Sequence record: MN794232.1
Strand: one strand, 5' to 3'
Length of the DNA: 64,000 nucleotides
How positions within the stretch are numbered: position 1 is the stretch's first letter; each line of letters begins with the position of its first letter. Positions 43,914-61,005 of this stretch are shown here, one piece after another. The notes under the pieces are model-generated. The model ran no database searches. It was given only the letters and a program-made list of their open reading frames with translations, and was not told the DNA's origin. Made by a program: the position numbers and the translations under genes.

Positions 43914-44438
43914 CTATTTGCGCCCTTTACGATTTGCCTTATTTGCTTTTCTTTTTGCTCTACGCAATTCTTTGCGTTTTGCGATTTTGTCTGCACGTCT
44001 AACTGCATCATAATCCGCAGCACACGACGCAGCAAACGCATCAGGCTTGAAAACGGGTTCTTGACCCACGTATCCCAAGATAGTGCCCTTAGCTTCGTTA
44101 TACGCAACGTGTGAACGATGGGATGGATCTGGGTTGATGTCAACGTGAACTTCAAACCCACGAGTACCACACATTGGCTTAACACGCAGAGCAGTTTCAC
44201 CTGCTTTATAGACTTCATTCATCAAACGACTACGAATACCATCTTTACAAGACATGTACGCTGGTTCAGTTTCGATAGATTTGAATACTTGAGCGCCTTT
44301 ACTACCCTCAAGGTGAATGATGATTACAGTAGCGTAACTAATCATATCACTCTTACGCTTGCTATCACACCCAACATAAATCGTACTGTTCGGATGACTG
44401 TTATTGATAGCTGTTTCAATTGCTTCCCAATCGAACAT
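43914..44438 (-). CDS. RNase H-like YkuK (DUF458) family protein
   Basis: IYVGCDS, YATVIIIH, RLMNEV, EVHVDIN, KPDAFAASCAAD. Confidence 0.8.
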   Translation of the reverse strand: MFDWEAIETAINNSHPNSTIYVGCDSKRKSDMISYATVIIIHLEGSKGAQVFKSIETEPAYMSCKDGIRSRLMNEVYKAGETALRVKPMCGTRGFEVHVDINPDPSHRSHVAYNEAKGTILGYVGQEPVFKPDAFAASCAADYDAVRRADKIAKRKELRRAKRKANKANRKGRK

Positions 44439-44489
44439 TTTCACCTCTGTACAAAAAAAGGGCAGCACAATGCCGCCCTTATCACTTAT

Positions 44490-45929
44490 TTAAAAGCTGT
44501 AGCGATCAACGCCTACAGTTTTCAGCATGATCTTGACTGGCTCAAGCTCACCACCTAACAATGAAGTCAGGATAGATGGGCTACAACCCGATACCAGTGC
44601 AGTACCCGCTTCGCCAGCTTTAACCGGAACGTTGCCAAGACGACCACGAATGTTCCAGAAGACTAGTTGTGGCATTTCATAGCCAGCACGTGCGTACATA
44701 GCTTTGATTGCGTCGAAGTTTGCACGTTCGCCGCGACCGTACCAACCACCACCAGTATTTGCTTGGTCGAATTCCATGTCGCTCATGATAAGCAACTTAG
44801 TTGGCATTTCTTCTTGTGAAAGATTTGCACGTTTTGCACGCTCTAACAGAACGTTGAAGCACTTACCGATGTTTGTGCTCATGTCTTCACCTGAGCGATT
44901 CATGTTGTCAAGACGCTCTTTTAGTGAGCTACCGCGCAACTGGTGGAAGTGCGGATCGCTTGAGAACGAAATGAACTGATCTTTGAAGATTCCTTCATTG
45001 CGTTCAGCAACATAGATGCCAAGAGACATTGCAACTTGCTTACAAGTCACGCCAGAACGATCTGTACCTGCGTTGATTGGCGTGCTCATAGAGCCAGATA
45101 CGTCAACAACAGGGATGATGCGCTCATCAGAGCCTTCCATGTAGTTCGGCAGAGCTTTCCATTGCTCGTTCGCTACAGACGCATTGCCATGACTAACGCT
45201 CTTAACGACATCATATGGGAACAATGCACCAGCGTTGATCTTCGCTTCACCTTTTTGAAGTGACTCGATGTAGCTTGTGTAACGAGCAGAAGCGTTACGA
45301 CCGAATGCTTGTTGATAACGAGCAGACGCTACAGATGGCAACTTACCAAAGTCGATTGCATCCCATTCTTGCGCACACATCTTCTGTTCAACAGTGTCAG
45401 ACAAAAGTGCTAGAATCTTACGCCACTGCTTCGCAGTTACACCAAGAGACTTGATTGTGCGCTTGAACACATGACCGTTTTTGCTGTTTTCACGTGGGAA
45501 CCACTTAGCAGCAAGACTATTCTTGTCGTTTACAATCGCGTTTGACCACAATGTGATCGCGTCTTTCTCAAGTCTTGTACCGAACGCAGAAATCAAGTCG
45601 TCGAAACGACCTAGTTCTGGAATTTTCGACATTACAGCACGAGCTACGTCAGGCTGCTCATTACAAAGCTTAGTGAATAGAGTACGGAAAGTACCACGTT
45701 CACCCGCACCACCGCGAACATCACGAGACCACAAAAGAATGCGTGTCGCTAGTTCTGGGTTTTCTGCAAACGCACGACCGAACAGTGTTTTAGACTGATC
45801 GTTGCCACGCATAGCAGCAATACCGAAGAACAAGTTTAGACACTCGTTACCTGAAGTGCTGTGAGTAACTGCACCGTTTGCTGTACGTGAATCGTTTGAT
45901 TGCATAGCGTTCATAAATAGACTAGTCAT
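44490..45929 (-). CDS. TROVE-like DUF2828 / vWA protein (Ro60-related architecture)
   Basis: TANGA...SG..CLNLFF, RDVRGGAGER, AAKWFPR, MIDAS DVSGSM, MSTN, SDMEFD, VFWN; start set by GGAG SD. Confidence 0.8.
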   Translation of the reverse strand: MTSLFMNAMQSNDSRTANGAVTHSTSGNECLNLFFGIAAMRGNDQSKTLFGRAFAENPELATRILLWSRDVRGGAGERGTFRTLFTKLCNEQPDVARAVMSKIPELGRFDDLISAFGTRLEKDAITLWSNAIVNDKNSLAAKWFPRENSKNGHVFKRTIKSLGVTAKQWRKILALLSDTVEQKMCAQEWDAIDFGKLPSVASARYQQAFGRNASARYTSYIESLQKGEAKINAGALFPYDVVKSVSHGNASVANEQWKALPNYMEGSDERIIPVVDVSGSMSTPINAGTDRSGVTCKQVAMSLGIYVAERNEGIFKDQFISFSSDPHFHQLRGSSLKERLDNMNRSGEDMSTNIGKCFNVLLERAKRANLSQEEMPTKLLIMSDMEFDQANTGGGWYGRGERANFDAIKAMYARAGYEMPQLVFWNIRGRLGNVPVKAGEAGTALVSGCSPSILTSLLGGELEPVKIMLKTVGVDRYSF

Positions 45930-45962
45930 TGCTGTAAGCTCCATTATCAAGGATCAAAAAAT

Positions 45963-46565
45963 ATGTTTCACATTGTATATCAAATCACAAACTTAATAAA
46001 CAATAAAATTTACGTCGGTAAACATTCAACAGAGAACATCTACGACGATTACATGGGCTCGGGTAAATTGTTAACCAGAGCCATTTCAAAGTACGGTAAA
46101 GAAAATTTCATCAAAGAGATATTATTCGTTTCACATGATGAGACTGAAGCATATCACAAAGAGTCTGAAATTGTCAACGAAAACTTTGTTTTGCGTCAAG
46201 ACACATACAATTTAAAAATCGGTGGTCTTGGTGGATCATCAGGAATCGAATCACCATGTAAAGGTCGTGCGTTGAGTGAAGATACTAAACGAAAAATGAG
46301 AAAAAGTAAACAATTTTCTCAAAATCATTTAGATTATCTGTCAGATAAGTTAACATCATACAACAAATCTCGCACAGGACAATCAAGAGACGACCTTAAA
46401 GGGTGTTCGAACCCGATGCATAAAGGAATGTGGGTTACACCCGCAGGTAAATTTGAATCGTCCAGCGAAGCTGCATTGGTGAACAATTGCAGTCAATCAA
46501 CTGTAGTTCGACGCTGCAAAAACCCAAATTTCGACGATTGGTTTATCGAAAATTCATCCGAGTGA
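45963..46565 (+). mobile_element. GIY-YIG (Seg-like) homing endonuclease
   Basis: IVYQITNLINNKIYVGKH...YMGSG...YNLKIGG; antisense to neighbours; CATAAATA at 45912. Confidence 0.9.
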
Positions 46566-46857
46566 GATTCGTACCGTTTTCGTAAATCTCAACGAGAACA
46601 CGACCGCCCGTTTCGTAAGACGTGCGAAGAGAACGATAACCATGTTCTTCAAAGAATGCACGAATAATCGACGCGCCACGCTTGTCTTTATCAGCAGCGT
46701 GAATAGGCACTTTCACGATGATAGGGAAAGTAGAACCCGACTCAACGGCGTGCATGAATTCTTTATCACATTCGCTCGTGTAATGCTCGGTAAGAATTCG
46801 TTTTTCTTCTGCTTCACGAGCGTGAATTTGTTGTTTGAGTTCATTATGATTAATCAT
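46543..46857 (-). CDS. hypothetical protein
   Basis: ORF in minus-strand operon. Confidence 0.6.
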   Translation of the reverse strand: MINHNELKQQIHAREAEEKRILTEHYTSECDKEFMHAVESGSTFPIIVKVPIHAADKDKRGASIIRAFFEEHGYRSLRTSYETGGRVLVEIYENGTNLTRMNFR

Positions 46858-47189
46858 TGAAACCCCGCTTGTTTGTTTTCTCGAATTGTCAATTTGACAA
46901 AAGAATATGAGTAATCTCTCATATCACGCGGATCGCCAGAGTAATGTCCGAACTGTGCGTCGAAGTTATGAAAACCCTCGCGTCGCATGACGCCTTTGAT
47001 GAGAGACATCATTTCATCACAACATTCATTGCGGTCAACATTCACCTGAATCGTGATTGGAAACTGAAACCCAGCAACGCCACCGATTTTGCGCTCGATT
47101 GCTTTGCGCATTTCAACTACGAAGAGTTCTTCACGAGTTGAGCGATTCTGTTTGACTTTTTGAATTAATGTATCGTATAAATTACCCAT
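46854..47189 (-). CDS. hypothetical protein
   Basis: start MGNLY; loosely similar to downstream ORF (FP-I-x-x-x-V). Confidence 0.6.
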   Translation of the reverse strand: MGNLYDTLIQKVKQNRSTREELFVVEMRKAIERKIGGVAGFQFPITIQVNVDRNECCDEMMSLIKGVMRREGFHNFDAQFGHYSGDPRDMRDYSYSFVKLTIRENKQAGFQ

Positions 47190-47556
47190 CAATATATTCC
47201 TTAATCGGCTTAGAAAAGTGACGAATACAAGAACTGTCAAGACGCTTGCGACCATCACCGTCTATATCTGGTAGCGTGTAATCGTCATTGAATGGCTGAC
47301 CGCTTTCTTTCGCAATCTCATAGGCATCGGCTCGATTGAAGTATTCACCACAATAGTTGATAAACCCTTGACCGCGATCACCAAGTTCGCTTCGATGTTC
47401 ATACGTGCAGCCAAGCTCTTTCAATAGCTTGAAGACTGATTGCATGTTTCGACCGAAATGACAGCTATCGGCAACAACAATGTCGCGCACTTCACCGTTC
47501 GGTAGTGTTACTCGAATTGCATTAGCAGCAGACGATATTACATTGACGTGCGACAT
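47182..47556 (-). CDS. hypothetical protein
   Basis: RH...QGFIN..GEYFNR..AY.IA motif common in phage proteins. Confidence 0.65.
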   Translation of the reverse strand: MSHVNVISSAANAIRVTLPNGEVRDIVVADSCHFGRNMQSVFKLLKELGCTYEHRSELGDRGQGFINYCGEYFNRADAYEIAKESGQPFNDDYTLPDIDGDGRKRLDSSCIRHFSKPIKEYIDG

Positions 47557-47897
47557 GTATCGTACCTCATAAAAATTGAACCAACGCGCTTATACTGACC
47601 AGAGTGAGAAAGCAACAGAGCCATTTTACTATGACCAACGGGATTACTTGTCACTAGAACAACAGTGCGCGGAAAATTACGATGATCAATCGCATGAGAG
47701 AGAATATCGTATCCCTCTCTACCAACATCATCACCTAGATCGTTGTCCATGAATAGCGTGATGTCAGTTAGATTTGTGTGCTTGACGAAATTCATACCGT
47801 CTTCGAATGTTCGAAGCACGAGTTTTTCACCATCACGTACGTAATCAGACGTGAACTTATCAATATCACGCAGATCATCAATCATAACATAAAACAT
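47538..47897 (-). CDS. cyclic-phosphate-processing receiver-like domain protein
   Basis: IDDLR, DNDLG, GYD, TSNPVG motifs. Confidence 0.7.
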   Translation of the reverse strand: MFYVMIDDLRDIDKFTSDYVRDGEKLVLRTFEDGMNFVKHTNLTDITLFMDNDLGDDVGREGYDILSHAIDHRNFPRTVVLVTSNPVGHSKMALLLSHSGQYKRVGSIFMRYDTCRTSM

Positions 47898-47934
47898 ATA
47901 AATACTCTTGTTATCATCAAACAGGACGGTCTAC

Positions 47935-48480
47935 ATGAACTATTTGAAAATTTATGACAGTATAGTGAAACGAGCACAAAAACGCAAGACAATTTCAGGG
48001 TATTTTGAAAGCCATCACATTTTACCGAGGTGTATGGGAGGCAATAACAAAAAATCAAACATCGTTAGATTGACCGCAAAGGAGCACTACATTTCACACT
48101 TATTGTTAGCTAAGATTCACAACACTCGCGGTTTATGGTTAGCCGTCGCATCAATGAGGGGATGCAATGGCGGAGGTGTGAGATTTACAGGATCTATGTA
48201 CGAAACTGCAAAACGAAAAATTTCCGAAAGTATCCGAGGTGAGAATAACCCGAATTACGGTGGTCTCAGAGAAGAAACAAAACAAAAACTTTCAATCAAA
48301 GCCACTGGCAGAAAACACTCACAAGAGACTAAAGATGCTATGAGCAAAAATCGTCGAGGTGAGAATAACGGCATGTACGGAAAGAAACAACCTACCGAAA
48401 CATGCATTCACTGTGGAAAGATTGCGTCGAAATCAAACATCAAACGCTGGCACAATGATAACTGCAAGTTAAATACATGA
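47935..48480 (+). mobile_element. HNH (Mob-like) homing endonuclease with NUMOD3-like repeats
   Basis: ESHHILPRCMGG...NIVRLTAKEHYISH; exact TATAAATA at 47897-47904; antisense. Confidence 0.9.
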
Positions 48481-48506
48481 TACAGTATCAACAAACGGAA
48501 GTCAAC

Positions 48507-48878
48507 ATGAAAGACGAAAAAATTATTTCTTTCGATGAATATCTAAATGAAGGATGGTTTGAGAGGCAATGGTCTCGATACAAAGCAGGGGAAGATGCAC
48601 GCAGCATAAAGAAACTAGCTAAGATGCATACCAAGCTTCTGCACATCGAACAGAAAGCAAAGCAAAACAAATACCGATACGAAGCCGTACGGTTCAACTA
48701 CGAACACATCAAAATGAATGTGCTCGATGCCAAGAAGCTAATTAACAAGCTGCGATACAAGAAAGGGATTAGTCAAGAGCTAGTTCAGGCAATGGATAAA
48801 CTAGACATTGAACTTGATAGACTCAACGACTTTGCCGTTGAGGGATTGCATGAGCTAATGATTCAACATAAGCTATAA
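48507..48878 (+). CDS. hypothetical protein, possible internal head protein
   Basis: IISFDEYLNE N-terminal motif. Confidence 0.6.
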   Translation: MKDEKIISFDEYLNEGWFERQWSRYKAGEDARSIKKLAKMHTKLLHIEQKAKQNKYRYEAVRFNYEHIKMNVLDAKKLINKLRYKKGISQELVQAMDKLDIELDRLNDFAVEGLHELMIQHKL

Positions 48879-48908
48879 AAGAAAAGCCCCGTTTTGGGGC
48901 TTTTTTGT

Positions 48909-49121
48909 TTAATGTGAGTGGCGTAACTTCTTTTCGATCATTCGATCTACAATCGTGGAGTACATAAGATGCTCTTTGTAGTATTTCTCATCAACTCGAT
49001 TGCACTGGAATTGTCGAAAATCTTTGCGTAAGCGGGCAATGAATTTATTAAGTGCTTTGCGCACTTTGCAAACTTCAGACAGTTCCATGCTTTTTAGTGT
49101 ATCTTCAGAAAGTATTTCCAT
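48909..49121 (-). CDS. hypothetical protein
   Basis: GAGG RBS. Confidence 0.6.
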   Translation of the reverse strand: MEILSEDTLKSMELSEVCKVRKALNKFIARLRKDFRQFQCNRVDEKYYKEHLMYSTIVDRMIEKKLRHSH

Positions 49122-49150
49122 GATTGTTCACCTCTTAGTTAATAGAATAC

Positions 49151-49195
49151 GGGAGACACGGGAATCGAACCCATTGCCTTGACCACATATCTCCC
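49151..49195 (-). pseudogene. tRNA minihelix remnant (acceptor + T arm only)
   Basis: GGGAGAT/GTCTCCC stem, ATGGG-TTCGATT-CCCGT; no CCA. Confidence 0.6.
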
Positions 49196-49219
49196 ACTGA
49201 GAGTTACGCCAATCTGATT

Positions 49220-49444
49220 TTAATGTGCTAGACTCATCAAACGGCGCATACGTTCGCGTTCTGAAAGCTCATCCAAATTATCTACTTTCACCTCTTTGAC
49301 TTCTTCTTTCGGCTCTTCTGGCTCATCTTTTTTACGAGCATCAGGACCGATGTTTTTCCAAAGTGGACTATTGCGCCAGTTGTCGTTGAAACCATTGCCT
49401 AGACCACGACCTTCGCGTGCGTGCGATTTGTTATGAATGCTCAT
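49220..49444 (-). CDS. hypothetical protein
   Basis: coupled ORF. Confidence 0.6.
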   Translation of the reverse strand: MSIHNKSHAREGRGLGNGFNDNWRNSPLWKNIGPDARKKDEPEEPKEEVKEVKVDNLDELSERERMRRLMSLAH

Positions 49445-49647
49445 TATTCGTTTGATTTCTTTGTTACTTGTCTTGCAATACCTACAGCAGCAGCACCAGC
49501 AGCTACTTTAGCACCTGTCTTTGCCGCTTTACCGGCTTTCTTTGCACCAGATTTGACTCGATCTTTGATAGAACGTTTCTTTTTCTTATCTTCTGGTCGA
49601 GATTCTTCAATTTCTGACATGAATTTGTCAAAGGTCTTTTCACTCAT
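49444..49647 (-). CDS. small basic protein, possible internal head protein
   Basis: MSEKTFDKFMSE; K/A-rich. Confidence 0.65.
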   Translation of the reverse strand: MSEKTFDKFMSEIEESRPEDKKKKRSIKDRVKSGAKKAGKAAKTGAKVAAGAAAVGIARQVTKKSNE

Positions 49648-49754
49648 GACTCTTATCTCCAGTTAGTTGAGTTCATCTGTATTTAGAAGATATTTCACAT
49701 CATTCACTCTATGATGATAAATACATAAAGTAAACAATAAAAGAGAATCGAAAA

Positions 49755-50093
49755 ATGGCATTCACTAAGATCGAACTCCCCGCAAAGAGAAGCAGAAGAA
49801 GCATTTATATACCTGCGGGTCAGTACTATGCAGATCTAGACATGACACACCCACAACAACGAGACGGTAATTATTTTTCAGTTCTTGCAACGTTTGGGGA
49901 TGTGCAGATTGCATTCGGCGGGAGATGGTATGACAAGAAAAATCCACAAGACCCCGATGACCCGTTGCCTTCATTCCCTGAAGATTTCATTTTAGTTTCG
50001 TATAATGGACATTATGAAGCACAAGGCAATTTATTCAACACGAGCACTAGAATTTGGTTTAGTTCGATTTCTGGCTGCACACTACTATATTAA
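49755..50093 (+). CDS. hypothetical late protein
   Basis: GATAAATA upstream. Confidence 0.65.
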   Translation: MAFTKIELPAKRSRRSIYIPAGQYYADLDMTHPQQRDGNYFSVLATFGDVQIAFGGRWYDKKNPQDPDDPLPSFPEDFILVSYNGHYEAQGNLFNTSTRIWFSSISGCTLLY

Positions 50094-50102
50094 GGACACA
50101 AA

Positions 50103-51818
50103 ATGAGTTCTATCAATTTACCTGGCGGAGGACAACCTCTACCAAAATACGTAGAAGAAGCGCCTGCAAATGGGTTGCTATATGGACGTAAAGATGAGAC
50201 ATGGGAGCCGATTCCTGAAGACTCACTAACGCCGTTTCCATTAGGTGCGACCCCTAATTCATTCGATGCAAGAACCGGCGACAGAGACGCAGCAATCGCT
50301 CTAAGAGACGCTCATGCATCAGAAAACCCGTCGTGGGTTGCGTTTTATGTAAACAACCCGACATCGGCGATTGACCTTGTATATGAAGACATTTCGGTTG
50401 GCGGAACCGTTGCTGAAAGACAAACGTATACAGGAACACAATGGATTTCACAGCGTATTGTTGAAGGCATACCAGGTCCGATTGGGCCATCAGGTGAAGG
50501 GTCAATTCCCCCATTCGCGTCGATTGCCGAGCGAGATTCATTCTTCGCGTCATCGGGGAATAAATCACTATTGAAAAAAGGTTTGCCTGTATTCGTTCAA
50601 GAATTTGAAGGTCGAGCAAGCTCATATTATTGGAGAGGCGAGACAAACCCAAATACGTACGATGCTTCTAAGTTCTCACTAGCCGCAGTTCAATCAGGGA
50701 ACGGTGATTTATACTTAGCAAATACGCATAGAATATCTTCGTCAGGACAGAATATAGCAGTAACTAATATCATCGACAACGTGAGCTTTCACCCCGTATG
50801 GCAGACATATGAAGAAGGGAATACTGCAACGGTACGTGTGCGTTCTATCGAGTCTGTCAATGAATACTCAGATAAATCAGCACAGATAACTAACCCAAGA
50901 TGGGAACTAATGCAGATGCCAAACAACAGAACGTTATACTCAGTTGTAGTTGATTTTGTCAATGCATACGCTGAAATTGATGTTGTCGTTTATAAAAACA
51001 CAGATGAATATTATCAAACTAAAATATTCGATATTACACCAGGAGAAGTTGATGTATTAATCGAGCCACCGTTTGACATTCGTTCAATGGACACACTTGA
51101 GATTGAGTTGCGCAACCCGAACTTAGATGTTGTAGTATGGGGTAACTTATCAACAGGCATCCCATGGAATAAACCAACAACACGTGATTTTACCGACGAG
51201 ACGGTTGTAATTCAATCTGATTTAGATGCAGTCGAAACAAGAGTAAGTGACATCGAAGCAAACGCGATTGTCATCGGGGATAATGTTTCTAAGCTGACAA
51301 ATGACGCGGGATATATTAGCGACAAAGACATCATTTTCCAGAAGAGCAATAATACAGGAACTAATGTGTTAACGCTAAACGGGGCAGGTGATGAGGGTAC
51401 TATCCCACTATCACAAACCGATGAAAACGGTGTGTTATTCGAATACTCGTCAACTACTGGCAATTTCAGACCGCTTGAAGATAAACCAATGCACATTAAA
51501 CTTAGAATAAGTATTGATCGTTCTGGGGGTGGGTCAAATCCTGAGATTATAACGTGGGTTGAATCAGCAGCGACAGACACGACAGTTCCTAATGCTTTCA
51601 CACAAGAAACATCGGCATTTCGCATGGATGACCTGCAAACCGACCGTACATTATTTTTAATTGATACGATTTTAAATATGAACTCAAGTCGTTATTATCG
51701 CATAAGACTTCGTAATTTAAACGGCGATAATTTTGATGTTGATACATTCGGCCCGTTTGCAACAAGTTCGGGTAATGATATTTTTGCACCCGCAGTTGAG
51801 TTTATGATTAGTAGATAA
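50103..51818 (+). CDS. fibre-like virion protein with N-terminal foldon-like motif
   Basis: YVEEAPANGLLYGRKDETW; GIPGPIGPSG; coiled coil; VSKLTNDAGY. Confidence 0.7.
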   Translation: MSSINLPGGGQPLPKYVEEAPANGLLYGRKDETWEPIPEDSLTPFPLGATPNSFDARTGDRDAAIALRDAHASENPSWVAFYVNNPTSAIDLVYEDISVGGTVAERQTYTGTQWISQRIVEGIPGPIGPSGEGSIPPFASIAERDSFFASSGNKSLLKKGLPVFVQEFEGRASSYYWRGETNPNTYDASKFSLAAVQSGNGDLYLANTHRISSSGQNIAVTNIIDNVSFHPVWQTYEEGNTATVRVRSIESVNEYSDKSAQITNPRWELMQMPNNRTLYSVVVDFVNAYAEIDVVVYKNTDEYYQTKIFDITPGEVDVLIEPPFDIRSMDTLEIELRNPNLDVVVWGNLSTGIPWNKPTTRDFTDETVVIQSDLDAVETRVSDIEANAIVIGDNVSKLTNDAGYISDKDIIFQKSNNTGTNVLTLNGAGDEGTIPLSQTDENGVLFEYSSTTGNFRPLEDKPMHIKLRISIDRSGGGSNPEIITWVESAATDTTVPNAFTQETSAFRMDDLQTDRTLFLIDTILNMNSSRYYRIRLRNLNGDNFDVDTFGPFATSSGNDIFAPAVEFMISR

Positions 51819-52149
51819 AAGAGCCTTTCGGCTCTTTTAATTTGCAGAAACAAAAAAACCTGCTCAAGGCAGGTTTAGATGTGCAATACACAGACATTCG
51901 AGAATTGTTTTATCGTCTTTCCTTAAATCTCAATTGACTATCTCGATGTTTCTCATCAAGAGAATACCCATGATTCGGCATGAGACCTATTTCGTTTTAC
52001 AGTACGAACACCGTCTTAATGGTCATTTCCTACCACGAGAATGCGACAGGCTCACGTCATCACTGAGAAAGCAGCTAGTGCGCCTCATTACTATTAAAGT
52101 TTGCTTCTTTGATTAGTAATAGTTGCTGTACAATGTCTTATTGCGAATT

Positions 52150-52238
52150 TGGCGGAGATACTGGGAATCGAACCCAGAGAACGCTATTAACGTCCGACAC
52201 CTTAGCAGGGTGCTGTCATACCTTTAGACCATATCTCC
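52150..52238 (-). tRNA. tRNA-Ser(GCT)
   Basis: cloverleaf, long variable arm, CCA. Confidence 0.93.
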
Positions 52239-52243
52239 GTAGA

Positions 52244-52423
52244 TTATTTTTTACCACGCTCTGCTTTGCTAATCTCGACAGCAGCGATTTGTGCGTTTGC
52301 TTCTTTCTCAGTATCATGAGTACCAAGTACTCTACCTTTAGATGAAAGAGCAACCCATTTGTCGCCACGCTTCTCGACTTTCTCAACAAGCTTGTGATAT
52401 TCATCAAATGTTTTAAGTTTCAT
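52244..52423 (-). CDS. 59-aa probable internal head protein (not in ORF track)
   Basis: MKLKTFDEYHKLVE...; GAGG RBS; TATAAATA at 52449-52456. Confidence 0.7.
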   Translation of the reverse strand: MKLKTFDEYHKLVEKVEKRGDKWVALSSKGRVLGTHDTEKEANAQIAAVEISKAERGKK

Positions 52424-52625
52424 GTGTCATCCCTCAGTTAGTTTATTGTATTTATAACTGAACGACTTTTAAACAGTGGCATGCTGCTCTCATGCTCAGA
52501 CACATATTTGCTCTTATTGCAGGCGTGTGCCACGCGCAGCGCAGATCCCTTTTGATAATTTAATGACCAGCGGGACTCTTAGCAGGTCTATTCACTCTCT
52601 TTCGATTCGCGTTGCTAAGTGAATT

Positions 52626-52702
52626 TGGTGCCCAACCCGAGATTCGAACTCGGAACTTCTAGTGTTTGAAACTAGCGACTCTGCCAATTGGCCTAGTTGG
52701 GC
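52626..52702 (-). tRNA. tRNA-Leu(CAA), short variable loop
   Basis: CTAGT-TTCAAAC-ACTAG; CCA. Confidence 0.88.
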
Positions 52703-52706
52703 TTGA

Positions 52707-52809
52707 ATAAGCTGCCGCAACTCTTTAATCCCTAACACCTGTCAGCTTTCGCTCGGCTGAGACCGTTTTTCAACGGCGGTAGTCTAGCTTCGTATAGAAC
52801 GCGGCTTAT
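52707..52809 (-). ncRNA. candidate structured RNA
   Basis: closing ATAAGC/GCTTAT stem; two GAAA-capped hairpins. Confidence 0.45.
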
Positions 52810-52818
52810 GCTAGAGTT

Positions 52819-52895
52819 TGGTACGCACGGGCGGATTCGAACCGCCATCCCTGAGATTTTAAGCCTCATGCCTCTGCCAATTGGACCACGTGCGC
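52819..52895 (-). tRNA. tRNA-Leu(TAA), short variable loop
   Basis: TGAGG-CTTAAAA-TCTCA; CCA. Confidence 0.88.
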
Positions 52896-52897
52896 AT

Positions 52898-52971
52898 TGG
52901 AGCCCGAACAGAGAATCGAACTCTGACCGCGGGATTTGCAATCCCTCATACTTCCATTATACGATTCGGGC
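52898..52971 (-). tRNA. tRNA-Cys(GCA)
   Basis: cloverleaf, CCA. Confidence 0.92.
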
Positions 52972-53074
52972 AATATGTTAGTGCATTGCATGAGCTACTG
53001 GCGATCTTAATGGGTATTTCAAGCATTCAGAATTCCCATGCGCTACTACAATGCTTTTTTCGCTAAATGCACTT

Positions 53075-53151
53075 TGGGGTGACAGACGGGGATCGAACCC
53101 GCATCTTCCGGAATCACAACCCGGGGGTATTTCCACTTCACCCACTGCCAC
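53075..53151 (-). tRNA. tRNA-His(GTG)
   Basis: cloverleaf, C73; position -1 is T. Confidence 0.9.
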
Positions 53152-53205
53152 ACCAAAGTACACTTTGGGATGTTTACGACATCAAACGAATGCGCTCCCT
53201 GTGCA

Positions 53206-53448
53206 TTAATCAGATTTCTTTAAGTAGATACTATCAGGCGATAATTCTCTTGTAAACATATTTTTGAAATAAATTTCAATGTCTGCTTCAGTTGTTGAAG
53301 ACTCAATTTCAAGAGCACGCTCAAGAATCTTGTTACGCTTAAACCCAGCTCGCCAACAATCAAACATAAGTCTGTCCATACGTTGAAGCTTTTCAATTTG
53401 ATTCGAGTTTACGTATTCGTGAGTTTCAAGTAATGCAGGCGTATTCAT
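53206..53448 (-). CDS. hypothetical protein
   Basis: ORF between tRNAs, start MNTP. Confidence 0.55.
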   Translation of the reverse strand: MNTPALLETHEYVNSNQIEKLQRMDRLMFDCWRAGFKRNKILERALEIESSTTEADIEIYFKNMFTRELSPDSIYLKKSD

Positions 53449-53472
53449 AATATAGTTCTCATCATAAAAGAA

Positions 53473-53546
53473 TGGTAGCCCCTGACGGATTCGAGCCGTC
53501 TCTACTTCTGTGTAAAAGAAGCGTACTCCCATTATACTAAGGGGCT
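53473..53546 (-). tRNA. tRNA-Val(TAC)
   Basis: cloverleaf, CCA. Confidence 0.9.
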
Positions 53547-53552
53547 AGAATT

Positions 53553-53628
53553 TGGAGCGTCTACACGGATTCGAACCGAGACGAGTGACTTGGAAGGACA
53601 CCATGCTACCAATTGACATCATAGACGC
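53553..53628 (-). tRNA. tRNA-Gly(TCC)
   Basis: cloverleaf, CCA. Confidence 0.9.
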
Positions 53629-54053
53629 ATTGTTAATCTGAAGCATCAAACAAATCACGTATAGCACGTAGATTTGTAAGCTCTACTGTAAGTGTTCTAA
53701 TAAAGAACGGGTTGGTCTCTTTTGCGAGACGTTTTTCAACATCACGAATTTTATCGCGAATGTTGCCCTTGCTTAGTGTAAAGTAGTCATGCTTCTTTCT
53801 CTTCGTTTGAGGTTAAAATCAGGTTAACGTGCTCATTCACTTCTTGCTCGATTTGCCACTGTTCGTAGACATACTCAGCGTATAAAAGTGTTTCGTACAT
53901 GTTCACCCTTTTTGAATGAATTTAAGCTTACGTTTAAGCTTGCCACGAGATTTATGTCGCTTACACAGTTTAGCACCGTGATAGCTATGATATTGATAAA
54001 AGCTAGTTAGCTTCTTATACAATGATTTCATGCATACCTCATGTTTTTGAATT

Positions 54054-54129
54054 TGGTGGAGACACCGATACTCGAAATCGGATCTAATGGCTTATGAGAC
54101 CATTGCTCTACCACTTGAGCTACATCTCC
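54054..54129 (-). tRNA. tRNA-Met(CAT), probably elongator
   Basis: cloverleaf, CCA. Confidence 0.85.
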
Positions 54130-54155
54130 AAAATCAGTAATTAACTCATTTAATC

Positions 54156-54475
54156 GCACACGGGCTGACACCATATATTTATGGTCTGAGCGAGGAACCA
54201 CATAGTGGGTACTGTCACCTCATCTTAGTTTTGATTGTTTTACATGACGATAACTAGAAACGTTCATAATAATGCCACGCGATACTTCCTGTATCACGGC
54301 TAACTGAGTTAGCAAACTTGCCTTGCGGCTGTAGTGTCGTTTCCGACGAATTAAGTACAGACAATACCGAAGTGTTTTTTCGTCTTTTGCATTAATCGGA
54401 GTTGACTAGCTTATTGATTCTCAACAAGCAAATATCGTCTGTTTCAGCGACGCGCCTATCTGACTATTTCTAGGC
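54156..54475 (-). ncRNA. candidate large structured ncRNA (about 320 nt)
   Basis: no ORF; at least 8 hairpins incl. C(UUCG)G, GAAA and GCAA tetraloops. Confidence 0.6.
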
Positions 54476-54576
54476 AGAGAGAATCTTTCCTTTCAAGCTG
54501 CGCCGAAGCACTACCCAGGTTAAGATCATCACTTCTTTTAAGTAATTTTCAATTGTTTGCTGTATATTGTCTCTCT
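54476..54576 (-). ncRNA. CAGCAA-module RNA G
   Basis: AGAGAGA/TCTCTCT closing stem, ATACAGCAAACAAT. Confidence 0.6.
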
Positions 54577-54634
54577 AATCATACTCATGATATGCCGAAG
54601 CAAAGTATCATTCGCCGCATGATAGAGCTTAATT

Positions 54635-54710
54635 TGGCATCCCCAGAGGGATTTGAACCCACAACCCACGACTTAGAAGGTCGTTGCTCTTCCAATTGAG
54701 CTATGAGGAC
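54635..54710 (-). tRNA. tRNA-Arg(TCT)
   Basis: cloverleaf, CCA. Confidence 0.93.
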
Positions 54711-54786
54711 ATTAAAAGAATTCGATCCATGAGCTATTGCGCAGACGATGGTAGTAAAGAGACTCTGCACTCATGTGATCGAAATT

Positions 54787-54861
54787 TGGTGGACACGCAG
54801 GGAGTCGAACCCTATCCTCCTCATTGCAAGTGAGGCGCTTTCCCAATTAAGCTAACGGCCC
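54787..54861 (-). tRNA. tRNA-Ala(TGC), imperfect acceptor stem
   Basis: G3-U70 present; stem pairs only with a bulge. Confidence 0.75.
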
Positions 54862-54871
54862 AATGTTCGTT

Positions 54872-55081
54872 TTACAACTGTGTGATTGAGATATGATCCC
54901 ATCCGTATAAACCTTCAAGTTCTTCAATAGGCTCACAAACAATGTCAGAAATATATTCAGCAACTTTTGCTTCAATTTCTTCATCAGATAGCTTTTCATC
55001 AATTGCAAAAGCATCTTCATTATTGTTGCCACCGAAATAGCCGCCAATGTCATATTCACACCATACTGAAATATAGTTCAT
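54872..55081 (-). CDS. hypothetical acidic protein
   Basis: GAGAATAACATG; MNYISVWCEYD. Confidence 0.65.
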   Translation of the reverse strand: MNYISVWCEYDIGGYFGGNNNEDAFAIDEKLSDEEIEAKVAEYISDIVCEPIEELEGLYGWDHISITQL

Positions 55082-55105
55082 GTTATTCTCACAGTTGTTT
55101 GAAAA

Positions 55106-55181
55106 TGGTGCCCTGACACGGATTTGAACCGCGAACCTGCTCATTACAAGTGAGCTGCACTGCCAGTTGTGCTATCAGGGC
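55106..55181 (-). tRNA. tRNA-Thr(TGT)
   Basis: cloverleaf, CCA. Confidence 0.93.
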
Positions 55182-55187
55182 GTTACT

Positions 55188-55300
55188 GAGTGTTATTACT
55201 TGCGTCGTCCAGACCAGAGATACCAACTCTGAAAGGGAATCGAACCCCAAACATTTCTTTTCGTAAGAAGAATATTAGTAATTGTTTGCTGAAAACACTC
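55188..55300 (-). ncRNA. circularly permuted tRNA mimic (YrlA-like) RNA F
   Basis: terminal stem, CAGCAAACA bulge, inner stem, variable-like hairpin, T arm, capped acceptor hairpin, D-like hairpin. Confidence 0.75.
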
Positions 55301-55309
55301 TTCGGTATT

Positions 55310-55383
55310 TGGCAGGGGATAACGGATTCGAACCGGTACTGCGTGAGTCAAAGTCACGTATGCTGCCTTTACATCAATCCCCT
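55310..55383 (-). tRNA. tRNA-Gln(TTG)
   Basis: cloverleaf, CCA. Confidence 0.92.
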
Positions 55384-55402
55384 ATTATTCTTAAATTATC
55401 TT

Positions 55403-55478
55403 TGGCGGAACCGACGGGGCTTGAACCCGCTTCCTTTCCCGTGACAGGGGAATATGCACCCAGTTACACCTCGGCTCC
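55403..55478 (-). tRNA. tRNA-Asp(GTC)
   Basis: cloverleaf, CCA. Confidence 0.93.
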
Positions 55479-55550
55479 CCAAAGACAACTTAAAGTAGTT
55501 GCTTTGTTTTTTTTTCAAGTTCACACTTAACGGCAGTGACTCTCCGAATT

Positions 55551-55626
55551 TGGCGGACCGCCCGAGACTCGAACTCGGAACTCCTCGCTTAACAGGCGAG
55601 CACTCTAACCATTGAGTTAGCGATCC
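55551..55626 (-). tRNA. tRNA-Asn(GTT)
   Basis: cloverleaf, CCA. Confidence 0.93.
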
Positions 55627-56000
55627 ATATTCTTTTGTAATGCGTGTTCTTCACGATGGCAGTTAGAACAAAGCATAATGCACTTATCTAACTCAGTTTC
55701 GATTCTCGACCATGATATAGTCTGACTAGAGATACCGAAATCTTTCTCGTTTGGATCAAGATGATGAAACTCTAATGCTTCAATGCATCTATCATACCCG
55801 CATCGTTCACAACAACCACCTTTATATTCAACGGCTCTTAGTTTAGCACGCTTTCTATAAGAAATGACTGCTTCTTTATTCTTTCGTTTTCGTTCAGCAT
55901 CAGTGTGCTTTCGTCGATTCTTACCGTTGTATAAACCAGCACATCGACGACTACAGAATTTATTAAGTGCGTCTGCACCACACTCTAAGCATTTATTCAT
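55617..56000 (-). mobile_element. HNH endonuclease in tRNA cluster
   Basis: CLEC..CSRRC; CERCG...LEFHHLDP...LCSNCHREEH. Confidence 0.85.
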
Positions 56001-56144
56001 TTTTTGAGTTACCTATTTAAGTTTAAAAGATAACTCAGTGATAAAGTGTTTAGGCGCCACATTCGTAAGTGAATGACTCTATTACTACTTAGCAATTACA
56101 TTCAAGCGTTACCAAGAATCATGCCACGTAGCTTTAAATTAAAC

Positions 56145-56202
56145 AGCAATCCTTTTCTCTTTTTGCAAATAAAAGTTTTGTATTGTTTGCTGAAAGATTG
56201 CT
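56145..56202 (-). ncRNA. minimal CAGCAA-module RNA H
   Basis: AGCAATC/GATTGCT stem, TTTCAGCAAACAAT. Confidence 0.55.
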
Positions 56203-56208
56203 TAATTC

Positions 56209-56282
56209 TGGCAGGGACATAGAGATTCGAACTCTAACGAACGGGTTTGGAATCCGCCATGCTGCCGTTACATCATGTCCCT
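56209..56282 (-). tRNA. tRNA-Trp(CCA)
   Basis: cloverleaf, CCA. Confidence 0.9.
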
Positions 56283-56288
56283 AAAATT

Positions 56289-56362
56289 TGGTAGCCCCAG
56301 ACAGACTCGAACTGTCAACGTGCGATTATCGGTCGCGTGTTTTACCGTTAAACTATGGAGCT
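56289..56362 (-). tRNA. tRNA-Ile(GAT), C at position 33
   Basis: loop CCGATAA. Confidence 0.85.
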
Positions 56363-56426
56363 AAAGTGAGCACATTTCAGTGCTCGTGTTAATCGGTTAA
56401 GTGACTAAACTTCCCGGTTAACTAAT

Positions 56427-56525
56427 TGGCGGAAGACTAGGGATTCGAACCCTAACATCACCTCCCGGTGACCGACGGTTTTCAAGACCGTTGCCGCTAC
56501 CCAGAATCTTTCGGCTAAGCCTTCC
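56427..56525 (-). tRNA. tRNA-Ser(TGA), enlarged D loop
   Basis: 99 nt, long variable arm, CCA. Confidence 0.88.
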
Positions 56526-56532
56526 ATTAATT

Positions 56533-56608
56533 TGGTAGCGAGTGCCAGAATCGAACTGACCTAAACTAGCTTATGAGACTAGTGAGTTCACCAGAACTCT
56601 AACTCGCA
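56533..56608 (-). tRNA. tRNA-Met(CAT), initiator-like
   Basis: 1:72 mismatch and A11-U24; lacks the three G-C anticodon-stem pairs. Confidence 0.75.
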
Positions 56609-56710
56609 ATTATTCAACAGCTTGCGTTCTTTGGTCTGTTTATCGCTGTCTGAACTGAGTTCGCCGAGCGATCAATAGATTAAGTTGAATTGCAGTATGC
56701 AAGCTAAATT

Positions 56711-56796
56711 TGGTGGAGCGTAGAGGAATCGAACCTCTCTTCCCATTACGGGACACGGATTTACAGTCCGCTGCCGCACCTTGCGGCTTACGCTCC
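56711..56796 (-). tRNA. tRNA-Tyr(GTA)
   Basis: cloverleaf, variable arm, CCA. Confidence 0.93.
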
Positions 56797-56802
56797 AGAA
56801 TT

Positions 56803-56876
56803 TGGTACTCGATACGGGAGTCGAACCCGTCCTACTTCCTTGAAAGGGAAGTGACCTACCGATAGTCGAATCGAGC
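56803..56876 (-). tRNA. tRNA-Glu(TTC)
   Basis: cloverleaf, CCA. Confidence 0.92.
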
Positions 56877-56939
56877 ATTAAATTGTATATTGATTTGCAA
56901 GCTAATCAACTCGCAAAGCGATACACAATGTATCTAATT

Positions 56940-57016
56940 TGGTACGCCGCCCTGGACTCGAACCAGACACCTGAGAGTTAAAAGCTCCCTGCTCTTCCAT
57001 GATGAGCTACCGACGC
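56940..57016 (-). tRNA. tRNA-Lys(TTT)
   Basis: cloverleaf, CCA. Confidence 0.92.
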
Positions 57017-57027
57017 ATTATAAAATC

Positions 57028-57102
57028 TGGTGGGTCGCAAGAGATTCGAACTCTCACCGTTCTGGTTAAAAGCCAGATGTACTACCGTTATACGAACGAC
57101 CC
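57028..57102 (-). tRNA. tRNA-Lys(TTT), second copy
   Basis: cloverleaf, CCA. Confidence 0.92.
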
Positions 57103-57108
57103 AGAATG

Positions 57109-57183
57109 TGGTGCACCCCCTCGGAATCGAACCGAGCACTGCGGGACTTCAATCCGTCGCTTTTCCTGATAAGCTAAGGGTGC
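57109..57183 (-). tRNA. tRNA-Phe(GAA), distorted anticodon arm
   Basis: GGA-TTGAAG-TCC gives a 6-nt loop, or a mismatched stem with a 7-nt loop. Confidence 0.65.
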
Positions 57184-57184
57184 A

Positions 57185-57262
57185 TGGTACGCAAGAAGAG
57201 ATTCGAACTCTTAACTTCTGGTTTCTAAGACCAGTGCCTCTGCCAGATTGGGCTACTTGCGC
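57185..57262 (-). tRNA. tRNA-Leu(TAG), short variable loop
   Basis: CTGGT-CTTAGAA-ACCAG; CCA. Confidence 0.88.
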
Positions 57263-57297
57263 ATTGTTTGTTTTTGAACGTTACTTCGTTCTTCTTC

Positions 57298-57418
57298 ATT
57301 GTACATGATGTTTATATCGTTGTAAACATCTTTTTTGAAAAACTTTTCATTAACTTTTGAATGATATTTCGCTTTTCTCTATTGTACATGATGTTTATAT
57401 CGTTGTAAACATCTTTTT
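57298..57418 (-). repeat. exact 38-bp direct repeat = tandem promoters
   Basis: 57298-57335 and 57381-57418; TTTACA-17-TACAAT with 8-bp inverted repeat. Confidence 0.85.
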
Positions 57419-57574
57419 AAATTTATTTTGAAGAACTTAACGTTTTCATTTTTCTATGTGTTAATCTTAACACTCGCTCAAGACATCTTAAACACTAATT
57501 TGTGAAAAAGTTCGTTAAATTCTATCATCACGACAGTACTTAACGAGATACGGTCCTAAGCGTATCAAATTAAT

Positions 57575-57700
57575 TCAGAATGGTGAGACTTGAACTCACT
57601 TCGAGTAATAGCGTAAACTAACAGTTGTTGCCAGAGGCTATCAATTATTCTCTACCGAGTATGTTGCAACTCTGCATTTCCCCATTTCTAGGCATTCTGA
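57575..57700 (-). ncRNA. tRNA-like RNA E (acceptor + T arm, expanded core, no CCA)
   Basis: TCAGAATG/CATTCTGA; GTGAG-TTCAAGT-CTCAC. Confidence 0.6.
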
Positions 57701-57704
57701 AATA

Positions 57705-57780
57705 TGGCACCCCACAGAAGATTCGAACTTCTAACCTGCGCCTTCGTAGGACGCTGCTCTTCCAATTGAGCTAGTAGGGC
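57705..57780 (-). tRNA. tRNA-Arg(ACG)
   Basis: cloverleaf, CCA. Confidence 0.93.
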
Positions 57781-57787
57781 ATTAAAC

Positions 57788-57864
57788 TGGTCCGTGACAA
57801 GCGATTCGAACGCTTAACTTCTCCGCCCCAAACGGAGTACTCTACCAGATTGAGCTAGTCACGG
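57788..57864 (-). tRNA. tRNA-Pro(TGG)
   Basis: cloverleaf, CCA. Confidence 0.93.
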
Positions 57865-57873
57865 ATTTTAAAT

Positions 57874-57947
57874 TGGTCGGGACGAAGAGACTCGAACTCT
57901 TACCACATGCTCCCAAAGCATGAACGCTACCTTTACGCCACGTCCCG
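57874..57947 (-). tRNA. tRNA-Pro(TGG), second copy
   Basis: cloverleaf, CCA. Confidence 0.92.
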
Positions 57948-58079
57948 TTTGTTCTTTAACTTTGTTTATCATACTCTGCTTTCAAAGTACGTTAAACAAA
58001 ATTTTTGATTTTCTTTCGCCCATAAAAAAGGACGCTACGTGCGTCCTCAAGTATACTTCTATGTTATACTATTGGACTA

Positions 58080-58206: not shown

Positions 58207-58315
58207 TTAAAATAAAAATGTTTTTGTTTGTATAATAGTACTTATAACACCAAATTTGACGATTTGCGGTATTTTCGCAGAAAATTGAAAAAAAAATCAA
58301 CTTTCTGCGATTTTC

Positions 58316-58561: not shown

Positions 58562-58574
58562 TTGTTATTAAAAT

Positions 58575-58690: not shown

Positions 58691-58695
58691 ATGAA

Positions 58696-60882: not shown

Positions 60883-61005
60883 TGGTCGAGTGTAACGGAA
60901 TCGAACCGTTCCCACGATCTCCCTATGATATGCGTAAATTGGTTGCTGAATATAATCATGTCTGATTACAGTATGCTACGTGTGCTGCCACTACACCAAC
61001 ACTCG
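60883..61005 (-). ncRNA. tRNA-like RNA D with module insertion
   Basis: paralog of C; CCA present; 21-bp perfect inverted repeat 60873-60893/60999-61019. Confidence 0.82.

What the first reader, a model, noticed from the sequence alone, without database searches (positions are those of the whole stretch)
45920..45945. The same CAGCAA motif sits between the SD and start codon of the TROVE-like gene: likely autoregulation
Seen: minus strand reads GGAG-CTTACAGCA-ATG (SD 45942-45939, ATG 45929), so TACAGCAAT covers the ribosome-binding site and overlaps the AUG. A weak AGCTT/AACGCT pairing could close it like element H. The hexamer alone occurs by chance every few kb, but its placement in this 9-nt window links the ncRNA motif to this gene. 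Inference: the protein represses its own translation and the ncRNAs titrate it.
Basis: partly seen in the sequence, partly recalled or inferred. Interest (0 to 1): 0.85.

Follow-up and report, generated by a model that had tools for sequence, protein, structure and literature searches.

The report
Ro60-like gene leader shares ncRNA motif
The short CAGCAA sequence at the ribosome-binding site of this Vibrio phage's Ro60-like RNA-binding gene is the remnant of a leader hairpin kept across related phages, and its core also starts several structured RNAs in the phage's tRNA cluster, which makes self-repression of translation plausible but unproven.

Summary
On the minus strand, GGAG (45942-45939), CTTACAGCA and ATG (45929) precede a 479-aa DUF2828/DUF7788 gene. 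Its predicted fold best matches Ro60.

In this window alone the motif is only weakly significant (p about 0.01). The comparative evidence is stronger:
- Thirteen of 14 distinct leaders of orthologues without the endonuclease insert, down to 58% protein identity, keep GAnAUn-NN-(A/U)CAGCA upstream of the Shine-Dalgarno sequence.
- The 5' block pairs with the start-codon region in 78 of 78 pairs, and two of the six pairs show compensatory changes.
- The extended motif occurs nowhere else in 290 kb except at two tRNA-array sites.
- The core (helix, then WWW-CAGCAA) begins at least five structured RNAs in the tRNA array. Two of these carry T-arm-like hairpins, as Y RNAs do.

In this phage a 624-nt GIY-YIG homing-endonuclease cassette replaced the promoter, the 5' half of the hairpin and the first codons. 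Only TTACAGCAAT remains, now between a new Shine-Dalgarno sequence and the AUG.

Autoregulation with competition from the ncRNAs is the best reading. It is inferred, not shown.

The parts
45928..45937 (-). TTACAGCAAT: the core of the leader motif. It lies between the Shine-Dalgarno sequence and the AUG, and its last AT are the first two bases of the start codon.
   Evidence: identical 10-mer in the KVP40/PG216 leader at -27..-18
45939..45942 (-). Shine-Dalgarno GGAG, 9 nt before the AUG. It is carried by the endonuclease cassette.
44490..45929 (-). Ro60-like gene (DUF2828 + DUF7788, 479 aa): a helical ring plus a vWA domain with DxSxS.
   Evidence: Pfam; AlphaFold2 model, pLDDT 76; Foldseek top hits are all Ro60, E 1e-7 to 3e-5, TM 0.5-0.6; invariant D276, S278, S280
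44458..44480 (-). Intrinsic terminator-like hairpin followed by a T run, directly after the gene's stop codon.
45919..46541 (.). A 624-nt homing-endonuclease cassette. It replaces the 99 nt that in PG216/KVP40 hold the early promoter, the leader hairpin and the first three codons.
45963..46565 (+). Seg-like GIY-YIG homing endonuclease ORF (200 aa), divergent from the Ro60-like gene.
   Evidence: Pfam SegE_GIY-YIG/GIY-YIG; present or absent among close relatives; relatives are Seg endonucleases
55182..55309 (-). Structured RNA in the tRNA-Gln/tRNA-Thr spacer. In order: closing stem GAGUGUU (55300-55294) / AACACUC (55194-55188), UU-CAGCAAACAAU (55293-55281), a hairpin, a T-arm-like hairpin (55248-55234), and a hairpin with a UUGGUAU loop (55231-55215).
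   Evidence: 4 pairs with compensatory changes in the two hairpins
56145..56203 (-). Hairpin RNA after tRNA-Trp. The closing stem AAGCAAUCUU/AAGGAUUGCU covaries in nt-1 and 1.081.O, with U-CAGCAAACAAU unpaired just 3' of the 5' strand.
54552..54571 (-). GACAAUAUACAGCAAACAAU: the extended motif at the start of the structured region between tRNA-Arg(tct) and tRNA-Met.
52123..52137 (-). GACAUUGUACAGCAA: the extended motif 13 nt after tRNA-Ser(gct), starting the last structured RNA of the array. It differs from the KVP40 leader block only at the variable position.
60939..60978 (-). A local hairpin (covarying between phages), then UAUUCAGCAACCAAU, followed about 35 nt later by a T-arm-like hairpin.

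Best explanation
TTACAGCAAT at the ribosome-binding site is the surviving core of a conserved RNA operator in the leader of the phage's Ro60-like gene.

Shown:
- In relatives without the endonuclease insert, the gene has its own early-type promoter.
- Their leader reads GACAUU-NN-ACAGCAA-(5-30 nt)-Shine-Dalgarno-AAUGUC. GACAUU pairs with the start-codon region, so the AUG lies in the stem and CAGCAA plus the Shine-Dalgarno sequence lie in the loop.
- The same module (a helix followed at once by two or three A/U and then CAGCAA) starts at least five structured RNAs in the tRNA array on the same strand. Two of them have T-arm-like hairpins.

Inferred:
- The array RNAs are Y-RNA-like ligands of the Ro60-like protein, released from the tRNA precursor by tRNA processing.
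- CAGCAA plays the part that the 5'-proximal GNCGAA/CGAA motif plays in bacterial and Thermus-phage Y RNAs.
- The leader copy lets surplus free protein bind its own mRNA and block initiation, while the abundant array RNAs compete for the protein.

In this phage a GIY-YIG homing-endonuclease cassette has overwritten the promoter, the GACAUU strand and codons 2-3. It brought a new GGAG and AUG. Only the single-stranded core is left, at -8 to +2, where a bound protein would directly occlude the ribosome.
For: - Conservation: 13 of 14 distinct HEG-less leaders, down to 58% protein identity, keep GA[CA]A[AT][AT]NN[AT]CAGCA while the flanking leader bases vary.
- Leader stem: 78 of 78 pairs are formed. 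Pair 3 switches C-G to A-U in three leaders and pair 6 switches U-A to A-U in one. Only 1 of 5000 partner permutations does as well. The stem appears in the minimum-free-energy fold of 8 leaders.
- Specificity: in 290 kb, both strands, the extended motif occurs only in these leaders and at two tRNA-array sites, always on the transcribed strand. The exact 11-mer CAGCAAACAAT occurs 3 times, all in the array.
- ncRNA architecture: closing stems next to the motif covary. The T-arm-like hairpin and a second hairpin covary.
- Protein: the predicted fold best matches Ro60, including a phage Ro60, over its full length, and the MIDAS DxSxS motif is invariant.
[quoted passage not shown] A phage Ro60 binds nearby Y-like RNAs through a short motif in a bulge (PMC12135203).
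- Window leader: p about 0.012 against the ncRNA-derived matrix.
Against: - There is no binding, expression or RNA-end data for any of these phages.
- The 6-bp leader stem is weak, about -3 kcal/mol. I chose its partner by eye in the three GAAAUU leaders.
- The array RNAs match no Rfam Y RNA family at E<=5. They lie 6-15 kb from the gene, not within 4 kb as for YrlA.
- Orthologues at 60% identity (L016) and at 56% identity or below, and FelixO1, show no such motif.
- In this window the helix half of the module is gone. All three HEG+ alleles share the cassette by descent, so they count as one observation. Their conserved junction is also the endonuclease's own 5' UTR.
- About 131 kb of the genome was not scanned.
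Confidence: 0.4

Rival explanations
1. The helix + CAGCAA module is real and acts at the RNA level, but another factor reads it. Candidates are a host or phage endoribonuclease that sets the 5' ends of the spacer RNAs and trims tRNA 3' trailers (RNase E-like, or the conserved neighbouring RNase H-like DUF458 protein), or a different RNA-binding protein. In the leader it would then control mRNA processing or stability rather than autogenous repression.
For: - In four array elements the motif lies 17-22 nt (73 nt in one) after tRNA 3' ends, at the start of spacer RNAs, where processing must happen.
- The DUF2828 gene is followed by a PF04308 RNase H-like gene in KVP40-like phages and in several metagenomic relatives.
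- Nothing ties the motif to the Ro60-like protein except its presence in that gene's leader.
Against: - The one mRNA leader found to carry the extended motif belongs to the one predicted RNA-binding protein of the region.
- A cut between the Shine-Dalgarno sequence and the AUG in this phage would simply inactivate the mRNA.
- The architecture (a 5'-proximal motif next to a closing stem, plus T-arm-like hairpins) matches protein-bound Y RNAs.
Confidence: 0.2
2. In this particular phage the motif copy does nothing. It is a leftover of the ancestral leader at the cassette junction, or a chance match. The junction is conserved because it holds two back-to-back ribosome-binding sites (for the endonuclease and the Ro60-like gene) and the endonuclease's 5' UTR.
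For: - The helix strand GACAUU and the promoter are gone.
- The p value in the window is only about 0.01.
- All HEG+ alleles descend from one cassette.
- The + strand reads AAGGA-N9-ATG for the endonuclease and has a CATAAATAG resembling a T4 late promoter.
- CAATG is shared with the ancestral start context in any case.
Against: - The 10-mer is identical to the KVP40 leader core, yet the bases on both sides of it are unrelated to the ancestral leader. A simple relic would need two separate rearrangements.
- The core is the one leader block kept in every lineage, including D479, whose leader has otherwise diverged.
- Ro60 proteins can recognise the 5' strand without a helix.
Confidence: 0.25
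3. The motif matters at the DNA level, as the recognition or cleavage site of the homing endonuclease or as a recombination hotspot, and this explains why it sits at the cassette edge.
For: - The cassette ends 9-18 nt from the motif. The allele differences (AATGTCAGCA against AATGACTAGTCTA) cluster there, as expected for a site made immune to cleavage.
- Endonuclease genes also sit in the tRNA array (HNH; NUMOD3 protein in 1.081.O).
Against: - A homing site exploits conservation; it does not create it.
- The motif is kept in leaders at 58-80% protein identity that have no endonuclease nearby.
- It is strictly on the transcribed strand, and it is flanked by covarying RNA helices.
- This endonuclease is found only at this locus.
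Confidence: 0.07

Closest known systems
Ro60/Rsr with Y RNAs (bacterial YrlA/YrlB; Thermus phage phiLo Ro60 with Yrl1/Yrl2)
   Same: - The predicted protein fold is a Ro60-like ring plus a vWA domain.
- The RNAs are encoded on the same strand near the gene.
- There is a 5'/3' closing stem with a short conserved motif on the 5' strand.
- T-arm-like hairpins are present, in the order motif, hairpin, T-arm, further hairpins, as in YrlA (PMC4201824, PMC12135203).
   Different: - The protein hits Pfam DUF2828/DUF7788, not TROVE.
- The motif is CAGCAA, not GNCGAA/CGAA.
- No Rfam Y RNA model matches.
- The RNAs are spacers inside a 27-tRNA array 6-15 kb away.
- I found no Y RNA system reported to have a copy of the motif in the Ro60 mRNA leader.
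Autogenous translational repression by mimicry of the protein's RNA ligand (E. coli ThrRS/thrS operator, ribosomal-protein operators, T4 gp32, gp43 and RegA). This comparison rests on my own knowledge; only listed the T4 review PMC3014915, which I did not open.
   Same: A sequence and structure shared with the presumed primary ligand lies in the leader, and the hairpin includes the Shine-Dalgarno sequence and AUG. Competition between ligand and mRNA would set the protein level.
   Different: Repression is untested here. The protein family has no known case. In this window the operator is cut down to a single-stranded core by a mobile element.
T4 Seg-type free-standing GIY-YIG homing endonucleases
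   Same: It has a GIY-YIG domain. It is intergenic, is present or absent between near-identical phages, and is accompanied by a short tract of changed flanking sequence in the neighbouring gene.
   Different: Here the cassette replaces a regulatory leader and supplies a substitute ribosome-binding site and start codon for the host gene. Its cleavage site is unknown.

Membership tests
Ro60 / TROVE proteins | Ring of helical (HEAT-like) repeats followed by a vWA domain | tested here: met
   AlphaFold2 model, pLDDT 76. The nine best PDB matches are all Ro60 chains, aligned over the full length, E 1e-7 to 7e-4. This is a predicted structure, not a solved one.
Ro60 / TROVE proteins | Sequence match to TROVE (Pfam) or to solved Ro60 chains | tested here: not met
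   Pfam gives only DUF2828 and DUF7788. phmmer against PDB sequences finds no Ro60.
Ro60 / TROVE proteins | MIDAS motif (DxSxS) in the vWA domain | tested here: met
   D276, S278 and S280 (DVSGS) are invariant in 33 homologues, as are T352 and D384.
Ro60 / TROVE proteins | Binds Y RNA | not testable with these tools
   Needs EMSA or RIP.
Y RNA / YrlA-like RNAs | Match to an Rfam Y RNA covariance model | tested here: not met
   No Y RNA family among the matches at E<=5 in 44000-64000.
Y RNA / YrlA-like RNAs | 5'/3' closing stem with a conserved short motif on the 5' strand near the 5' end | tested here: met
   Seen in the Gln-Thr spacer RNA and the post-Trp hairpin. The motif is CAGCAA rather than GNCGAA.
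Y RNA / YrlA-like RNAs | tRNA-like T-arm (and D-arm) module | tested here: inconclusive
   Covarying GGTTCGAnTCC hairpins occur in two elements. A UUGGUAU-loop hairpin could be D-like. No full tRNA-like model was fitted.
Y RNA / YrlA-like RNAs | Encoded within about 4 kb of the Ro60 gene on the same strand | tested here: not met
   Same strand, but 6-15 kb upstream.
Autogenous translational operators | Element overlaps the Shine-Dalgarno sequence/AUG and is conserved in orthologues | tested here: met
Autogenous translational operators | The gene's own product binds the element and lowers translation | not testable with these tools
   Needs reporters, toeprinting and binding assays.
Seg-like GIY-YIG homing endonucleases | GIY-YIG domain, and presence/absence at one locus among close relatives | tested here: met
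Seg-like GIY-YIG homing endonucleases | Cleaves the allele that lacks it | not testable with these tools
   Needs a cleavage or co-infection assay.

The most novel reading that the evidence does not exclude
A phage Ro60-like protein sets its own level through a Y-RNA mimic in its mRNA leader. A family of Y-like RNAs cut out of the spacers of the phage's tRNA array competes for the protein. A homing endonuclease has homed into this operator and left a minimal single-stranded operator between a new Shine-Dalgarno sequence and the AUG. If so, the HEG+ and HEG-less phages form a natural experiment on what the protein needs to recognise.
Probability: 0.3. Interest if true: 0.75.

Novelty: new variant of a known kind. 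Interest (0 to 1): 0.6.

Why it matters
Ro60-like genes (DUF2828) are present in more than 700 phage records, typically phages that carry many tRNAs. One of them was reported to counter a bacterial defence system (PMC11482910). What they bind and how they are controlled is unknown outside one Thermus phage.

A defined, conserved RNA motif shared by the gene's own leader and by tRNA-array spacer RNAs gives concrete candidate ligands and a testable regulatory circuit. It would be the first case I know of in which a Ro60-family protein is feedback-controlled by mimicry of its RNA partner. It also shows a homing endonuclease remodelling a regulatory leader rather than a coding target.

Tried and rejected
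- Rfam at E<=5 over 44000-64000 found no Y RNA, leader or riboswitch family at the site or in the spacers.
- A PDB sequence search found no Ro60; only the fold search did.
It was uninformative. One hit with an extended match (L039) has no DUF2828 gene or tRNAs.
- FelixO1 was used to test generality. No specific k-mer is shared between its DUF2828 leader and its tRNA spacers.
- Orthologues at 54-56% identity lack the motif.
- The spacer regions could have encoded small proteins. Candidate AUGs are not conserved (AAUG becomes AACG in nt-1; AUGAUC becomes AUUGUC), so I rejected this.
- The motif could have been a general feature of KVP40 early promoters or PeSL cassettes. It is absent from 50 kb of KVP40 rich in such elements, and published PeSL stem-loops differ (PMC4122927).
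- CAGCAA could have paired with a downstream UUGCUG in the post-Trp hairpin. In nt-1 and 1.081.O the 3' strand covaries with the block upstream of the motif instead.
- No transcriptome paper for KVP40-like phages was found.

Full report
**What the window is.** The region is 100% identical to Vibrio phage VH1_2019, a 246-kb KVP40-like T4-type phage. The gene at 44490-45929(-) carries Pfam DUF2828 and DUF7788. It is annotated "RNA-binding protein" in KVP40 and relatives. A 27-tRNA array lies upstream on the same strand at 52150-59859, and two further long tRNA-like hits extend it to 60360.

**The observation.** The minus strand reads ttgataatGGAGcttacagcaATGactagt. An in-frame ATG at 45944 is missing in phage D480, so 45929 is the conserved start.

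Taken alone, the motif is not remarkable:
- The 9-mer is expected 0.71 times in the window.
- WTWCAGCAA occurs 14 times, mostly in coding sequence.
- A weight matrix built only from 19 ncRNA sites gives the leader site a score reached by 42 of 127,972 positions. That is p about 0.012 for one leader.

**The locus is polymorphic for a homing endonuclease.** The + strand ORF 45963-46565 is a Seg-like GIY-YIG endonuclease. It is present in VH1_2019, CZ01 and part of the D48x phages. It is absent from KVP40, PG216, ValKK3, nt-1, 1.081.O and the other D48x phages such as D525 and K566.

Against PG216, whose flanks are about 98% identical, a 624-nt cassette (46541-45919) replaces 99 nt. The lost 99 nt hold an early-type promoter (GTTTACAC-N16-TATAAT), the whole leader and codons 1-3. 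The cassette brings its own GGAG, the TTACAGCAAT and ATGACTAGTCTA. In every phage that lacks the insert, homology begins only at nucleotide 12 of the ORF.

**The leader in phages without the insert.** I collected leaders from isolates and from metagenomic contigs encoding proteins 58-80% identical. Thirteen of 14 distinct leaders carry GA[C/A]A[U/A][U/A]-NN-[A/U]CAGCA, with consensus GACAUUnnACAGCAA. The motif lies 5-30 nt upstream of the Shine-Dalgarno sequence, and the bases around it vary.

The GACAUU block is complementary to AAUGUC at the start codon:
- One leader has GACAUA with UAUGUC.
- Three leaders have GAAAUU with (G/A)AUUUC just after the Shine-Dalgarno sequence.
- All 78 possible pairs form, and two of the six positions show compensatory changes.
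- Only 1 of 5000 permutations of partners does as well.
- RNAfold places this stem in the minimum-free-energy structure of eight leaders, but it is weak, about -3 kcal/mol.

So the usual form is a hairpin with the AUG (or the Shine-Dalgarno edge) in the stem and CAGCAA plus the Shine-Dalgarno sequence in the loop. Orthologues at 60% identity (L016), at 54-56% identity, and in FelixO1 lack the motif.

**The link to the ncRNAs.** In the window these are 54571-54552 and 52137-52123, always on the transcribed strand. That 290 kb includes 50 kb of KVP40 early and replication genes.

The shorter core recurs at five array sites in the window. The exact 11-mer CAGCAAACAAT appears three times. In each case the core directly follows a helix:
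- In the tRNA-Gln/tRNA-Thr spacer, an invariant closing stem GAGUGUU/AACACUC brackets the motif, a hairpin, a covarying T-arm-like hairpin (GGUUCGAnUCC loop region) and a covarying hairpin with a UUGGUAU loop.
- After tRNA-Trp, the closing stem changes from GCAAUC/GAUUGC to GUAAUC/GAUUAC and AGAAUG/CAUUCU in other phages, while UU(U/G)CAGCAA stays unpaired.
- Upstream of the long tRNA-like genes, a covarying local hairpin precedes UAUUCAGCAACCAA and a T-arm-like hairpin.

The leader is therefore a member of a family of "helix + WWW-CAGCAA" modules.

**The protein.** An AlphaFold2 model (33-sequence alignment, pLDDT 76) has a helical N-terminal part and an alpha/beta C-terminal domain. Its nine best PDB matches are all Ro60 chains aligned over the full length: Thermus phage phiLo, Xenopus and human. 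DxSxS is invariant. Sequence methods do not reach TROVE.

Published work is relevant here:
- Bacterial YrlA RNAs carry a 5'-proximal GNCGAA motif thought to be the Ro60 site. Ro60 contacts mainly that 5' strand. The order of elements is motif, V, T, AS, D (PMC4201824).
- The phiLo Ro60 binds two nearby Y-like RNAs with a CGAA motif in a bulge, and it also binds host PNPase (PMC12135203).
- A Felixounavirus Ro60-like protein next to a tRNA array counters a defence system (PMC11482910).
- I found nothing on feedback control of a Ro60 gene.

**Mechanism.** The shown facts are a conserved, structured leader element, its kinship with the array RNAs, a Ro60-like fold, and truncation by a homing cassette in this phage.

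The inference is that the protein binds the module. The array RNAs, freed by tRNA processing, would be its main ligands. The leader copy would give autogenous repression, relieved by competition. In this phage the remaining single-stranded core at -8 to +2 could still be bound and would directly block the ribosome.

I put this full chain at about 0.4. The rivals are:
- another reader of the motif, such as a processing nuclease (0.2);
- a non-functional relic or chance copy in this allele (0.25);
- a DNA-level role tied to homing (0.07).

**Caveats.**
- The three HEG+ alleles share one cassette by descent.
- Their junction is also the endonuclease's 5' UTR and is only moderately better conserved than the rest of the cassette.
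- I picked the stem partner by eye in three leaders.
- About half of the genome was not scanned.
- No expression or binding data exist.

**Verdict.** It is a new variant of known kinds: the Ro60/Y-RNA partnership, and autogenous control by ligand mimicry.

Noticed in passing
window 58578-58690 and 60244-60360 (-): Two 113-117-nt matches to the Rfam tRNA model (50-56 bits over the whole model). ARAGORN does not call them, and KVP40 annotates them as pseudo-tRNAs. They would be tRNAs with insertions of about 40 nt, or tRNA-like RNAs.
   Followed up: no
window 54790-54861 (-): A tRNA-like hit (45.7 bits) not called by ARAGORN. At the same place nt-1, D480 and 1.081.O have a normal tRNA-Ala(tgc), so this looks like a decaying tRNA-Ala.
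   Followed up: partly
L006 17225-17255 (KVP40) and the same place in ValKK3, nt-1, 1.081.O, D525, F86: The spacer between the -35 and -10 boxes of the Ro60-like gene's promoter is a dyad (ACACGG...CCGTGT). Its inner bases change in a compensating way between phages. In KVP40 it reads like a tRNA T-arm (GGTTCAAATCC). It could be an operator or an RNA hairpin of read-through transcripts. It differs from published PeSL stem-loops.
   Followed up: partly
window 43914-44444 (-): An RNase H-like (PF04308, DUF458/YkuK) gene directly follows the Ro60-like gene. The pairing recurs in metagenomic relatives (L016, L018, L019, L020), sometimes with one or two small genes between. This may be a functional pair.
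   Followed up: partly
window 55617-56000 (-): An HNH endonuclease ORF (127 aa) sits inside the tRNA array. Its last codons overlap the 5' end of tRNA-Asn. It is absent at this position in KVP40.
   Followed up: partly
window ~45907-45915 (+): The cassette's altered codons create CATAAATAG on the + strand, one base from the T4 late-promoter consensus TATAAATA. It lies about 50 nt upstream of the endonuclease ATG. HEG-less phages read CATAAATGC there.
   Followed up: no
window 46148-46177 (-): The best sigma-70-like promoter match in the region (TTGACA-18-TATGCT with TG, 10 of 12) lies antisense inside the endonuclease ORF. It could drive the Ro60-like gene now that its own promoter is lost.
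   Followed up: no
window 54130-54600 (-): About 470 nt between tRNA-Arg(tct) and tRNA-Met have no conserved ORF but do have conserved hairpins, including a GUGC-UUCG-GCGC tetraloop hairpin. This is probably a large structured RNA. A MotA-box-like TTTGCTT plus TATGAT precedes it.
   Followed up: partly
window 51990-52070 (-): The post-tRNA-Ser RNA holds a hairpin GCUG-CUUUCU-CAGU nested in a longer stem. TAGCnGCnTTCTCnGnGA is invariant across five phages.
   Followed up: partly
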